From sequence record MK308675.1: a stretch of 64,000 nucleotides of DNA. One strand, given 5' to 3'. The notes below the pieces were generated by a model. It saw only the letters and a list, made by a program, of their open reading frames with translations. It searched no databases and was not told where the DNA came from. Shown in pieces: positions 1 through 59,949 of the stretch. The translations under genes were made by a program, and so were the position numbers. Position 1 is the stretch's first letter. Each line of letters begins with the position of its first letter.

Positions 1-225
1 GTTTTCAATCCATCGAAACATCCATTTACCTTCTCGAAACTCACACTGCATATTGTGGTATATGTCCCATACCTGCACGACTGTGCAGTCTTTCAAGAAA
101 CGTTCCATCCGAGGATATTGTTGAGCGTTTGTCGCAGCCTTCTTAGCCTCCGCTTTATGGACGTCGCGTGAGGTAATCGTCTTCCCTGCACACTTATCTT
201 TACTGCGGATAGTTCGTATACGCAT
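1..225 (-). CDS. hypothetical protein, partial (runs off window start)
   Basis: ATG at 225 with AAGGA SD upstream; open frame MRIRTIRSKDKC... to base 1 (read manually, not in ORF track). Confidence 0.7.
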   Translation of the reverse strand, partial: MRIRTIRSKDKCAGKTITSRDVHKAEAKKAATNAQQYPRMERFLKDCTVVQVWDIYHNMQCEFREGKWMFRWIEN

Positions 226-279
226 AAGGGTTTTCCTTAAAAGAAAAGACCAGAGGGGTTTCCTCCGGCCTGTTTGGGT

Positions 280-4628: not shown

Positions 4629-4835
4629 TTATAGTCTGTTTAACCAGTACCACAATAGGAGATAACCTACTGTGGGCAGGATAACGCCAGAACTAATGGC
4701 AGCTACGCCGACCGACTTTGCAAAGAAGCCGGAAAGCTGGATAATCTCGAAGCCGTGGATGACCTGAGTTAATCCTTTATATAGCCACCAAAAGAACTGG
4801 ACAAACAGAGTTAAAGATTTACCGAGCATACGCAT
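4629..4835 (-). CDS. small membrane protein
   Basis: hydrophobic; AGGAG SD at 4843-4847 places the start at 4835. Confidence 0.6.
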   Translation of the reverse strand: MRMLGKSLTLFVQFFWWLYKGLTQVIHGFEIIQLSGFFAKSVGVAAISSGVILPTVGYLLLWYWLNRL

Positions 4836-4924
4836 CAGAAATCTCCTCATCAGGAGTAAGCCCTCGCCCTAAGGACGCTCGAACGTCCTTAGGGCATTCT
4901 GCTTTTTATCTAAAGCATCGGTAT

Positions 4925-4937
4925 GGTAATATAGGTT
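4925..4937 (-). promoter_or_regulatory. early-type phage promoter motif (AACCTATATTACC)
   Basis: identical 13-mer at 47079-47091, variants at 37430, 50545, 59762; all upstream of minus-strand genes; contains the TATTAC core reported for phiKZ early promoters. Confidence 0.6.
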
Positions 4938-4950
4938 TTATTTTTAACTG

Positions 4951-58921: not shown

Positions 58922-58995
58922 AATCTTTGCCTTTAAGAAAAGGAGGCGTTTAACCTCCTTGATTATTTTTAATAGCCTTTATCAAATAGTATGAC

Positions 58996-59178
58996 TTAAG
59001 CCCTGTTCGGATTTAACTGGTCGAATGTCATTTGACGAATCTTCCAGAAATCTCCCCAGGTGACGAAGATATGTTTCTCCGAACCATGGGTATGAGTCGA
59101 AACGTGTTTGTAATCACCTTCGCCGCTAATGTGCGTGAAAGTTTTTACACCCTCGTCGTCGACGGAAACCTCTGTCAT
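58996..59178 (-). CDS. His-rich 60-aa protein, tandem copy 1
   Basis: AAGGA SD; 40 of 59 residues identical to copy 2. Confidence 0.8.
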   Translation of the reverse strand: MTEVSVDDEGVKTFTHISGEGDYKHVSTHTHGSEKHIFVTWGDFWKIRQMTFDQLNPNRA

Positions 59179-59288
59179 AAGCTGATTCCTTATGTAAGTG
59201 GCGACGATTTCCCTTTAAGGTGTTACCGCACCTTAAAGGGAACCCTAAGTCCAGTTTTCTCGTAAACTGGCAACGCTGTGACAATCAA
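59179..59288 (-). promoter_or_regulatory. structured 5-prime leader, copy 1 (two hairpins)
   Basis: hairpins 59251-59270 and 59209-59242; covaries with copy 2. Confidence 0.65.
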
Positions 59289-59372
59289 AACTAAGTTTTT
59301 CTTAGGTCTCAAGTGGAAGAGTAATACGAGAAAGAGGAGACATTGCAACCTCCTCGTATTTAAGTTGTACTG

Positions 59373-59552
59373 CTAAGCAGCAGGTTTAAGCTGGTCGTGC
59401 AGCATCTGCCGCGCCGTCCAGAAGTCGGTCCATGTGACGAATACGTGTCTTTCTGAACCGTGCTGATGGATTGTGACATGTTTGTAATCGCCCGTCCCAT
59501 TTACGTGGGTAAAGGTTTTTACTCCATGTTCATCAACACTTACACTAGTCAT
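59373..59552 (-). CDS. His-rich 59-aa protein, tandem copy 2
   Basis: start moved to MTSVSV by alignment with copy 1; AGGA SD. Confidence 0.8.
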   Translation of the reverse strand: MTSVSVDEHGVKTFTHVNGTGDYKHVTIHQHGSERHVFVTWTDFWTARQMLHDQLKPAA

Positions 59553-59662
59553 AAACATAGTTCCTGTGTTAGTTGTAAGTAACTTACTCCTACGGTGCGT
59601 CCACACCGTAGGAGTAACCCTCTTTCTGTTTTCTAGTTAACAGACAACTACAGAACAATCAA
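59553..59662 (-). promoter_or_regulatory. structured 5-prime leader, copy 2 (two hairpins)
   Basis: hairpins 59625-59644 and 59584-59617; offset 374-375 bp from copy 1. Confidence 0.65.
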
Positions 59663-59694
59663 TATATGTATACTCAAAAAGAAATACACCCATA

Positions 59695-59720
59695 CTCCTA
59701 TCTGCTCGAGCAGATAGGAG
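59695..59720. terminator. 26-bp perfect palindrome, terminator-like
   Basis: CTCCTATCTGCTCGAGCAGATAGGAG. Confidence 0.55.
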
Positions 59721-59761
59721 GGGGATGTTTTAAAGGATTAATAGTAGAGTAAAAGCATAAA

Positions 59762-59774
59762 GATAATATAGGTT
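59762..59774 (-). promoter_or_regulatory. early-type promoter variant AACCTATATTATC
   Basis: 11 of 13 match to 4925 motif. Confidence 0.5.
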
Positions 59775-59917
59775 ATAGAATCTTTTCAAGTTCAGGACGT
59801 ACGTTTTTAAAAACAGAGTTTGCTTATAGTATAGTAGAAGTCATCACGCCGGACGTCGAGAAACCTCCGTTCGGTTCTTTATTGCTGACACGATATGTTA
59901 TACTTCTACGACATATA

Positions 59918-59949
59918 CCTCCCTCCTCTGTTTCGGCAGAGGAGGGAGG
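59918..59949. terminator. intrinsic terminator, 13-bp stem
   Basis: CCTCCCTCCTCTG-TTTCGG-CAGAGGAGGGAGG right after stop of 59958-60203. Confidence 0.75.

What the first reader, a model, noticed from the sequence alone, without database searches (positions are those of the whole stretch)
58996..59662. Tandem 374-bp units: His-rich micro-protein behind a covarying two-hairpin leader
Seen: two minus-strand ORFs (60 and 59 aa, 40/59 identical, five His conserved) start 374 bp apart. Each has a 110-nt leader with the same layout on the sense strand: TTGATTGT-N6-GTTG, hairpin A (20 nt), GGGTT, hairpin B (14-bp perfect stem, GGTG-N6-CACC apex), ACTTACA, SD, ATG. Stem sequences differ but pairing is kept: 5 compensatory pairs in hairpin B (TTCCCTTTAAGGTG vs TTACTCCTACGGTG) and 2 in hairpin A, while single-stranded motifs stay identical. 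Inference: the structure is under selection, so this may be an undescribed cis-regulatory RNA (autoregulatory operator, metal or ligand switch, processing site) or a DNA hairpin signal paired with a small metal- or RNA-binding protein. I do not recognise it as a known riboswitch class.
Basis: partly seen in the sequence, partly recalled or inferred. Interest (0 to 1): 0.85.

Follow-up and report, generated by a model that had tools for sequence, protein, structure and literature searches.

The report
Duplicated small-gene cassette with two-hairpin leader
A jumbo Vibrio phage carries two old tandem copies of a small orphan gene, each preceded by the same conserved box and two stem-loops kept intact by compensating mutations; this is a real, selected but lineage-private mRNA leader whose function is still unproven.

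Summary
The window is the last 64 kb of Vibrio phage vB_VmeM-Yong, a phiKZ-like jumbo phage. On the minus strand two 374-bp units each hold TTGATTGT-N6-GTTG, a 6-7 bp hairpin A, GGGTT, a perfect 14-bp hairpin B, an SD, a 59/60-aa His-rich ORF and a terminator.

Synonymous sites between the ORFs are saturated, yet hairpin B stays perfect through 5 double substitutions (chance about 2e-6). Pairing and the single-stranded boxes are therefore under selection.

There is no Rfam hit. A covariance model finds only these two copies in the 290-kb genome. The protein, the leader and the flanking genes occur nowhere else in the phage, viral, metagenome or genome collections, so wider covariation cannot be tested.

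Context found here:
- A top-scoring phiKZ-type early promoter plus a 5'-UTR hairpin lies 100 nt upstream of unit 1.
- Hairpin B lacks the T-rich tail of this phage's terminators.
- The box is not a canonical promoter.
- One other locus has an analogous leader: promoter, two hairpins, small ORF.

Best reading (about 0.4): an RNA-level module that defines and protects the 5' end of each cistron. A riboswitch is unlikely. Autoregulation by a weakly PUR-like protein remains possible. Interest is modest.

The parts
59750..59787 (-). phiKZ-family early-type promoter (GAAAAGATTCTATAACCTATATTATCTTTATG) that opens the operon
   Evidence: PWM score 37.4; only 27 genome positions score >=15. The motif matches published phiKZ/EL/201phi2-1 promoter cores, and such motifs are early vRNAP promoters centred near -10.
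59695..59720 (-). Palindromic 13-bp 5'-UTR hairpin (CTCCTATCTGCTC/GAGCAGATAGGAG); with the promoter it forms an 88-nt module
   Evidence: I5. The module recurs at 90% identity at record ~124.1 kb, where SD and ATG follow 38 nt later, so it is not a stop signal.
59645..59662 (-). Box 1, TTGATTGT-N6-GTTG
   Evidence: Identical at all 12 specified positions in both units. PWM score -18, so not a canonical promoter.
59625..59644 (-). Hairpin A of unit 1 (TCTGTT-AACTAGAA-AACAGA)
59584..59617 (-). Hairpin B of unit 1, 14 perfect pairs, loop TGGACG, preceded by GGG
   Evidence: I3.
59561..59565 (-). SD of ORF1 (AGGAA), unpaired
59373..59552 (-). ORF1, 59-aa His-rich protein (QAX96301.1)
59334..59355 (-). 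Terminator T1 (GAGGAGGTTGCAATGTCTCCTC + TTTCTCGTAT)
   Evidence: The tail has 6 T in 10, typical of this phage's terminators.
59271..59288 (-). Box 2, TTGATTGT-N6-GTTG
   Evidence: PWM score -10.
59251..59270 (-). Hairpin A of unit 2 (CCAGTTT-ACGAGA-AAACTGG)
59209..59242 (-). Hairpin B of unit 2, 14 perfect pairs, loop CGGTAA, preceded by GGG
   Evidence: I2.
59186..59191 (-). SD of ORF2 (AAGGAA)
58996..59178 (-). ORF2, 60-aa His-rich protein (QAX96300.1)
58940..58960 (-). Terminator T2 (AAGGAGGTTAAACGCCTCCTT + TTCTT), homologous to T1; the next ORF starts about 20 nt later

Best explanation
Each 374-bp unit is a self-contained expression cassette (leader, small ORF, terminator) for an orphan His-rich beta-sheet protein. 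The two cassettes are the first two cistrons of an operon opened by a phiKZ-type early promoter at about 59787.

The two stem-loops act in the mRNA. They form a stable 5'-proximal structure in front of each cistron. The conserved box directly upstream, whose GTTG abuts hairpin A with no spacer in both copies, is where that cistron's 5' end is made. That could happen through a non-canonical (middle- or late-type) start or through endonucleolytic cleavage of the read-through transcript.

The resulting RNA begins with hairpins A and B, which would shield it from 5'-end-dependent decay and set the expression level of each copy independently of upstream terminator leakage.

Shown: the anatomy, selection on pairing and on the boxes, the promoter context, and that hairpin B is not terminator-like.
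Inferred: that the hairpins act at the RNA rather than the DNA level, that the box defines the 5' end, and that the hairpins stabilise the mRNA.
For: - Selection on pairing and on the single-stranded boxes persists despite saturated synonymous divergence.
- Both leaders fold into the same two hairpins with strong z-scores, and the SD is free.
- A bona fide early promoter plus 5'-UTR hairpin lies upstream and reads into unit 1.
- Hairpin B tails have 4 and 2 T in 10, against a mean of 5.7 for 68 true terminators, so hairpin B is not a stop signal.
- T1 and T2 are typical terminators, and the downstream 116-aa and 440-aa genes have no canonical promoter. Read-through and/or internal 5'-end formation is therefore required.
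- The only other two-hairpin leader in the genome (window 4833-4950) has a canonical promoter where the box sits. Its predicted start falls 1-3 nt before its first hairpin, and it has the same 30-nt distance from hairpin B to the ATG.
- Typical 5' UTRs in this phage and in phiKZ are short and unstructured, so this leader is a special feature.
- Two flanking G·U-capable pairs that extend hairpin B exist only on the sense strand.
Against: - There are no transcript data, so the 5' ends are unknown.
- The box fails the canonical promoter PWM and does not recur as a class in the genome. Its role as a start or cleavage site is inference.
- All stem pairs are Watson-Crick with no G·U inside the stems, so DNA-level hairpins are not excluded.
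- A purely protective hairpin does not explain why the GGTG/CACC apex, the GG in the loop and the GGG before the stem are conserved. Stems do, however, evolve slowly by compensation.
- The evidence rests on N = 2 copies.
Confidence: 0.4

Rival explanations
1. Autogenous operator: the small protein binds its own leader (hairpin B apex, flanks and/or the box) and controls translation or stability of its mRNA. The two paralogues have co-diverged with their own hairpins.
For: - Leader and ORF were duplicated and kept together.
- Sequence-specific conservation lies outside the pairing: the box, GGG, the GGTG/CACC apex and the loop GG.
- The AF2 model has a bbbb-alpha topology, and its best PDB matches are PUR repeats, which are dimerising nucleic-acid binders.
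Against: - The fold evidence is weak: pLDDT 69, Foldseek E 0.16-0.4, TM about 0.48, and no Pfam, PDB sequence or PHROG hit.
- Hairpin B ends 30 nt before the AUG and the SD is unpaired, unlike classical phage translational operators.
Confidence: 0.2
2. Processive antitermination or attenuation element: box plus hairpin A and/or the two stem-loops modify the transcribing polymerase (nut- or put-like) so that it reads through T1 and T2 into the promoter-less downstream genes.
For: - Each leader precedes a typical terminator (T1, T2), and the downstream genes lack canonical promoters.
- A conserved box followed by a hairpin, and two adjacent stem-loops, resemble the nut and put layouts (comparison from my own knowledge).
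Against: - There is no sequence similarity to known elements and no Rfam hit.
- The phage uses its own multisubunit RNAPs, for which no such mechanism is known.
- Similar terminator hairpins sit between most co-directional genes genome-wide without such leaders, so read-through does not seem to need them.
Confidence: 0.1
3. DNA-level signal: the palindromes extrude as DNA hairpins or cruciforms and serve as a promoter (as in N4 early promoters), a protein-binding site or a recombination site that also generated the tandem duplication.
For: - All 41 stem pairs in the four hairpins are Watson-Crick, with no G·U, so the structure is equally good on both strands.
- The box is conserved like a DNA recognition site.
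- A PeSL-like promoter plus hairpin module nearby has clearly been copied by recombination.
Against: - Covariation at non-conserved positions is expected for folding, not for duplex binding.
- The orientation and spacing relative to SD and ATG are conserved.
- The loops are 6-8 nt and the stem is 14 bp, unlike N4 promoter hairpins.
- Only two copies exist, so it is not a promoter class.
Confidence: 0.1
4. Riboswitch or metal-sensing RNA controlling a metal-binding His-rich protein.
For: - The protein has five conserved His.
- The leader is structured and conserved.
Against: - There is no Rfam match, even at permissive E-values.
- The element is two plain perfect hairpins with no junction or internal loop and with hairpin B loops that differ at 4 of 6 positions.
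- There is no expression platform: no terminator tail after hairpin B, no SD sequestration and no conserved alternative fold.
Confidence: 0.03

Closest known systems
5'-terminal stem-loop mRNA stabilisers and intercistronic processing hairpins of phage early operons (E. coli ompA-type 5' hairpins; T7 early-region RNase III sites; T4 RNase E processing sites with a downstream stem-loop) - from my own knowledge and the review PMC3014915
   Same: Stable hairpins sit in front of a cistron in a polycistronic early transcript. A short single-stranded conserved segment lies just upstream of the first hairpin. The SD is left free. The sequence of the stems is free to covary.
   Different: Hairpin B is a perfect 14-bp helix (16 bp with flanks), shorter than classical RNase III substrates of about 20 bp and without their internal loop. 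The box GAUUG only partly fits the RNase E RAUUW consensus. No cleavage or half-life data exist. The host is Vibrio and the polymerases are phage-encoded.
PeSL (promoter-early stem-loop) regulatory cassettes of T4-type phages (PMC2839356, PMC4122927)
   Same: They are small composite promoter plus stem-loop modules that flank orphan genes in variable regions and are copied or recombined. Here an 88-nt promoter plus hairpin module occurs twice at 90% identity, and the His-ORF cassettes are tandemly duplicated with their regulatory parts.
   Different: PeSLs use sigma-70-like promoters and their stem-loops are terminators present in many copies. The box of this leader is not a recognisable promoter, the leader occurs only twice, and hairpin B is not terminator-like.
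Phage translational operators (T4 RegA, gp32 and gp43; MS2 coat-protein hairpin) - own knowledge, PMC3014915
   Same: A small phage protein is encoded next to a conserved RNA hairpin in its own leader. Pairing is conserved while the stem sequence drifts.
   Different: Known operators overlap or abut the SD or AUG, whereas here the hairpin ends 30 nt upstream. RNA binding by the protein is not shown.
PUR repeat / Whirly-like fold (Pur-alpha repeat III, PDB 5fgo, 8chw)
   Same: The predicted bbbb-alpha topology and the size of about 60 residues match. PUR repeats dimerise to form a nucleic-acid-binding domain.
   Different: The match is not significant (E 0.16, TM 0.48), the model is of modest confidence, and there is no sequence-level similarity.

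Membership tests
Any Rfam family, including riboswitches | Covariance-model score at or above the family's gathering threshold | tested here: not met
   No match at gathering threshold in the whole window. The best permissive hits over the leaders are E = 3-10, far below gathering.
Riboswitch (generic) | Conserved multi-helix aptamer with junction or internal loops, plus an expression platform (terminator or SD-sequestering alternative fold) | tested here: not met
   The element is two plain hairpins; the hairpin B loops differ at 4 of 6 positions; the SD is unpaired; hairpin B has no T-rich tail; no conserved alternative pairing was found.
Intrinsic terminator / attenuator of this phage | Hairpin followed by a T-rich tail (68 reference terminators: mean 5.7 T in 10) | tested here: not met
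   Hairpin B tails are GTTACTTACA (4 T) and ATCGTCGCCA (2 T, lowest 3% of terminators).
phiKZ-family early promoter | Match to the conserved AT-rich core (here ACCTATATTRCC) centred near -10 | tested here: not met
   The boxes score -18 and -10 on a PWM where real sites score >=15. By contrast the site at 59750-59787 scores 37.4 and is a member.
PeSL cassette (T4-type phages) | Composite strong early promoter plus stem-loop terminator, repeated in variable regions and mediating recombination | tested here: inconclusive
   The leader itself has no recognisable promoter and only 2 copies. The adjacent 88-nt promoter plus hairpin module is duplicated at 90% identity and is PeSL-like, but it has a phage-RNAP promoter and a non-terminating hairpin.
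RNase III processing site (T7 type) | About 20 bp of double-stranded RNA, often with an internal loop, cleaved in vivo | tested here: inconclusive
   There are 14 perfect pairs, extendable to 16-20 bp with a 1x1 loop and G·U pairs in the MFE fold. Cleavage is not testable with these tools.
Phage translational operator | Hairpin overlapping or adjacent to the SD or AUG, bound by the encoded protein | tested here: not met
   Hairpin B ends 30-31 nt before the AUG and 18-20 nt before the SD. Protein binding is not testable here.
PUR / Whirly-like nucleic-acid-binding proteins | bbbb-alpha repeat with significant structural or sequence similarity to PUR repeats | tested here: inconclusive
   The topology matches, but Foldseek gives E 0.16-0.4 and TM about 0.48, with no Pfam or PDB sequence hit.
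N4-type DNA-hairpin promoter | 5-7 bp stem with a 3-nt loop, recognised by a single-subunit virion RNAP | tested here: not met
   The loops are 6-8 nt and hairpin B has 14 bp. The phage encodes multisubunit RNAPs. Extrusion is not testable here.
Type I toxin-antitoxin locus | Small hydrophobic membrane toxin with a structured 5' UTR and an antisense RNA | tested here: not met
   The His-rich protein is hydrophilic and predicted to be a beta-sheet plus helix. There is no PADLOC hit.

The most novel reading that the evidence does not exclude
The leader and its ORF form a duplicated, co-evolving RNA-protein pair. In this reading a PUR/Whirly-like His-rich micro-protein recognises the box and the apex of hairpin B in its own mRNA, for autoregulation or for handling of early mRNAs in a phiKZ-like phage. 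That would be a new operator and RNA-binding-protein family private to this phage lineage.
Probability: 0.12. Interest if true: 0.6.

Novelty: new member of a known kind. Interest (0 to 1): 0.3.

Why it matters
Post-transcriptional control in phiKZ-like jumbo phages is almost unexplored. Published transcript maps report short 31-40-nt 5' UTRs and say nothing about structured leaders, and middle and late promoters cannot be predicted from sequence.

This locus offers a compact, experimentally tractable case: two paralogous leaders with natural compensatory mutants. It could show how such phages define and protect the 5' ends of individual cistrons, or how a tiny orphan protein controls its own mRNA.

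The value is limited because the element is confined to one phage lineage with two copies and its function is unknown.

Tried and rejected
1. Known RNA family: rejected.

2. Homologues for covariation: none found by any route. These were the word-indexed protein search, exhaustive HMMER over 1.8 billion representatives (only the paralogue and repetitive His-rich junk), tblastn of phages, IMG/VR by protein, DNA patterns in IMG/VR (91 chance hits, none with more than 5 of 8 free stem pairs), metagenomes and genomes. The flanking genes are also private to Yong.

3. CM search of relatives: not pursued. The nearest relatives share only about 45% identity in RNAP beta and lack the gene.

4. Box as a sigma-70 promoter: there is no acceptable -10 at 16-18 nt (read), and the scan finds none there.

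5. Box as a canonical phage promoter: the PWM rejects it. The 6-of-8 resemblance to TATATTGT is not significant.

6. Box as a recurrent promoter class: there is only one extra 1-mismatch intergenic site (record 103254), at chance level. No other enriched upstream word resembles it.

7. General rule that promoters are followed by hairpins: rejected. Only about 7 of 26 have z < -2.

8. Leader 3 (window 4833-4950) as a true homologue: the sequence identity is at random level, so it is analogous only.

9. Conserved long-range pairing of the box with the region before each terminator: at chance level, with about 0.6 sites expected per unit and a bulge needed in unit 1.

10. Hairpin B as a terminator for either strand: the tails do not fit, and there are no plus-strand genes.

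11. Defence, anti-defence, Pfam, PHROG and PDB annotation of the protein: nothing found.

12. Integron attC and type I TA readings: core motifs and hydrophobicity are absent (by reading).

Full report
**Identity of the window.** The region is 100% identical to the four isolates of Vibrio phage vB_VmeM-Yong (about 290 kb, host Vibrio mediterranei). The window is the last 64 kb of record MK308674. The published comparison with phage pir03 shows that Yong belongs to the phiKZ-like jumbo phages with split multisubunit RNA polymerases. Its closest sequenced relatives (sm033, BONAISHI, pir03, C-ZP2022) share only about 45% amino-acid identity in a core RNAP subunit. In the deposited annotation every gene around the finding is a 'hypothetical protein'.

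**The observation.** Reading the minus strand confirms two units 374 bp apart. Each runs in this order:
- TTGATTGT-N6-GTTG;
- hairpin A directly abutting it (TCTGTT/AACAGA in unit 1, CCAGTTT/AAACTGG in unit 2);
- an 8-9 nt spacer ending in GGG;
- hairpin B, with 14 perfect pairs, a GGTG/CACC apex and a 6-nt loop;
- about 30 nt that include ACT(A/T)ACA and an AGGAA Shine-Dalgarno;
- ATG and a 59/60-aa ORF;
- a GAGGAGG...CCTCC terminator.

Both leaders are exactly 113 nt from the box to the ATG. The repeat finder reports the two 14-nt perfect inverted repeats (I2, I3). The alignment of the whole units shows that homology runs through the terminators as well. The proteins share 40 of 57 residues, with five invariant His.

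**Is it more than chance?** Between the ORFs, 13 of 16 fourfold-degenerate sites differ, dS cannot be computed, and dN is 0.26. The duplication is therefore old, the ORFs are under purifying selection, and neutral DNA should be randomised. Against that background several things stand out:
- The box is identical at 12 of 12 specified positions.
- Hairpin B keeps 14 of 14 Watson-Crick pairs although 5 positions changed on each arm: 9 pairs are invariant and 5 are changed on both sides.
- With 5 random substitutions per arm, a perfect stem has probability about 2e-6, and the simulated mean is 7.7 pairs.
- Sliding the 3' partners by 1-3 columns drops pairing from 97% to 40-57%.
- Each leader alone folds into the two hairpins with z = -4.3 and -3.9.
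- Hairpin A has two further double changes (by reading).

Selection on pairing and on the single-stranded motifs is therefore well supported. The whole case nevertheless rests on two sequences.

**Is it known, and does it occur elsewhere?** Rfam gives nothing, either at permissive E-values over the locus or at gathering thresholds over the window. There are no tRNAs. A covariance model built from the two leaders finds only those two copies in the complete Yong genome, at E about 1e-26. The next hit has E = 0.3.

The protein is an orphan:
- It matches no Pfam, PHROG or PADLOC family and has no PDB relative by sequence.
- The word-indexed search finds only the protein itself.
- Exhaustive HMMER over 1.8 billion representatives finds only the paralogue, plus long repetitive His-rich proteins matching short stretches.
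- tblastn against 50,697 phage records finds only the four Yong isolates.
- IMG/VR holds no relative.

Structure-neutral DNA patterns of the leader gave 91 chance-level hits in IMG/VR, none pairing at more than 5 of the 8 free stem positions. More specific patterns gave zero hits in IMG/VR, the metagenomes and 185,579 genomes. The flanking 440-aa gene is also private to Yong.

**Context in the phage's own regulatory grammar.** I assembled the record in pieces and extracted the intergenic regions.

*Promoters.* One word is strongly over-represented: AAAGTAAAACCTATATTACCTTTRTG. It is nearly always on the minus strand, 42-60 nt upstream of an ATG. A PWM built from it separates 27 sites (score >= 15) cleanly from everything else. 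Its core matches the published predicted promoters of phiKZ (TATATTAC), EL (WTTTYAAACCTACATTATY) and 201phi2-1. The jumbo-phage RNAP review states that such motifs have always proved to be early, virion-RNAP promoters centred near -10, and that middle and late promoters cannot be predicted from sequence.

One of the 27 sites, with score 37.4, lies at window 59750-59787, about 100 nt upstream of unit 1. It is followed by a 13-bp palindromic hairpin (59695-59720). This 88-nt promoter plus hairpin module recurs at 90% identity at record ~124.1 kb. There, SD and ATG of a gene follow the hairpin after 38 nt, so the hairpin is a 5'-UTR element and not a stop signal. The promoter therefore reads into unit 1.

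Downstream of unit 2, the 116-aa ORF starts about 20 nt after terminator T2. Neither it nor the 440-aa gene has a canonical promoter. The two His-ORF cassettes thus appear to be the first cistrons of an early operon.

*What the leader parts are not.*
- The boxes score -18 and -10 on the promoter PWM.
- They have no acceptable sigma-70 -10 element.
- They do not recur as a class. One 1-mismatch intergenic site, at record 103254, is at chance level.
- No other enriched upstream word resembles them.

*Hairpins genome-wide.* Of 66 perfect hairpins of at least 9 bp in the genome, 59 are intergenic, and most sit just after stop codons. Sixty-eight such terminator hairpins have on average 5.7 T in the 10-nt tail. 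Hairpin B has 4 and 2, so it is not terminator-like, whereas T1 (6 T) is typical.

Structured 5' UTRs are not the rule. Only about 7 of 26 promoter-proximal regions have z < -2, and phiKZ 5' UTRs are typically 31-40 nt.

*An analogous leader.* The single other two-hairpin leader is at window 4833-4950. It has a canonical promoter, a 6-bp hairpin starting 1-3 nt after the predicted start, a 12-bp hairpin, CTTAC, SD and ATG 30 nt after the hairpin, a 68-aa two-TM ORF, and a terminator. Its sequence identity to the His-ORF leaders is at random level, so it is analogous rather than demonstrably homologous. Its promoter does sit exactly where the box sits in the His-ORF leaders.

**The protein.** AlphaFold2 on the two-sequence alignment gives a modest model (pLDDT 69): four beta-strands and a C-terminal helix. 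The best PDB fold matches are PUR repeat III of Pur-alpha, a dimerising nucleic-acid-binding bbbb-alpha unit. They are not significant (E 0.16-0.4, TM about 0.48). The viral structure library returns only uncharacterised small phage proteins. This is a lead, not evidence.

**Mechanism.** The best-supported reading (about 0.4) is an RNA-level module that defines and protects the 5' end of each cistron. The box marks where that cistron's mRNA 5' end is made, either by a non-canonical start or by endonucleolytic cleavage of read-through transcripts. Hairpins A and B then form the structured 5' end that stabilises the message, while the SD stays free.

This reading fits the zero spacing between GTTG and hairpin A in both copies. 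It also fits the parallel with the window-4935 leader, the typical terminators flanking each unit, and the non-terminator tails of hairpin B.

It does not explain why the hairpin B apex and the loop GG are conserved. That keeps an autogenous operator model alive (about 0.2), even though hairpin B lies 30 nt from the AUG, unlike classical phage operators. Antitermination (about 0.1) and DNA-level hairpins (about 0.1) are not excluded; no stem contains a G·U pair, so the structure is equally good on both strands. A riboswitch or metal switch is unlikely (about 0.03): the hairpins are plain, the hairpin B loops differ at 4 of 6 positions, there is no expression platform, and I found no conserved alternative fold.

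**Comparison with known systems.** The element works most like 5'-terminal or intercistronic stabiliser and processing hairpins of phage early operons. Its modular, duplicated organisation in an orphan-rich region recalls the PeSL cassettes of T4-type phages, a resemblance that is stronger for the adjacent 88-nt promoter plus hairpin module. It is not a member of any curated RNA family. It fails the tests for terminator, canonical promoter, riboswitch and classical operator, and the RNase III and PUR-like tests are inconclusive.

**Verdict.** This is a real, selected, lineage-private structured leader of a duplicated orphan gene. It is a new member of a known kind of element, and its function is unproven. 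Interest is modest (0.3). The most novel reading not excluded is a co-evolving micro-protein and RNA operator pair (probability about 0.12).

Noticed in passing
window ~4950, 37440, 47089, 50555, 59787 (minus strand); 27 sites genome-wide: Yong has a sharply defined promoter class, AAAGTAAAACCTATATTACCTTTRTG, homologous to the phiKZ/EL/201phi2-1 early-promoter core. It appears not to be annotated in the record.
   Followed up: yes
window 59691-59777 and MK308674 record ~124060-124146: An 88-nt module of early promoter plus 13-bp palindromic 5'-UTR hairpin is duplicated at 90% identity in front of unrelated genes. It is a PeSL-like mobile regulatory cassette in a phiKZ-like phage.
   Followed up: partly
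window 4629-4950 (minus strand): A single-gene cassette: canonical promoter, a 6-bp and a 12-bp 5'-UTR hairpin (z = -6.4), then a 68-aa ORF with two hydrophobic segments and its own terminator. The ORF is private to Yong.
   Followed up: partly
L004 3431-3909 (record 103031-103509, minus strand): A 480-nt unannotated, hairpin-rich stretch between two genes. It includes TTGATTGT-N6-GTTT followed by a hairpin, and a GGGTT...CACC/GGTG hairpin. It could be a long structured leader or a non-coding RNA.
   Followed up: no
window 59838-59910 (minus strand): A 73-nt segment closed by an 8-bp stem (GUAGAAGU/ACUUCUAC) lies between the terminator of the 81-aa ORF (59918-59949) and the early promoter. A sub-threshold Rfam hit (BTnc231, E 0.025) falls on the opposite strand and is probably chance.
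   Followed up: no
genome-wide; e.g. record 18418, 34141, 39618, window 48928: Terminator hairpins share CT-rich 5' arms and GA-rich 3' arms with recurrent words (ACTCCTAC...GTAGGAGT). Hairpin B of leader 1 carries the same TACTCCTAC word, which hints at a common origin or a common constraint on the hairpins.
   Followed up: no
genome-wide upstream regions lacking the canonical promoter: TTTTTAACC is enriched in the sense orientation upstream of genes (11 versus 2 antisense). It may belong to a second promoter class or to terminator tails.
   Followed up: no
window 1-268 versus record 226533-226800: My string comparison of the window start with the XC31 record overlap was not identical, although the 1.8-kb locus is 100% identical to all four isolates. 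The window may derive from another isolate or differ by a small indel.
   Followed up: no
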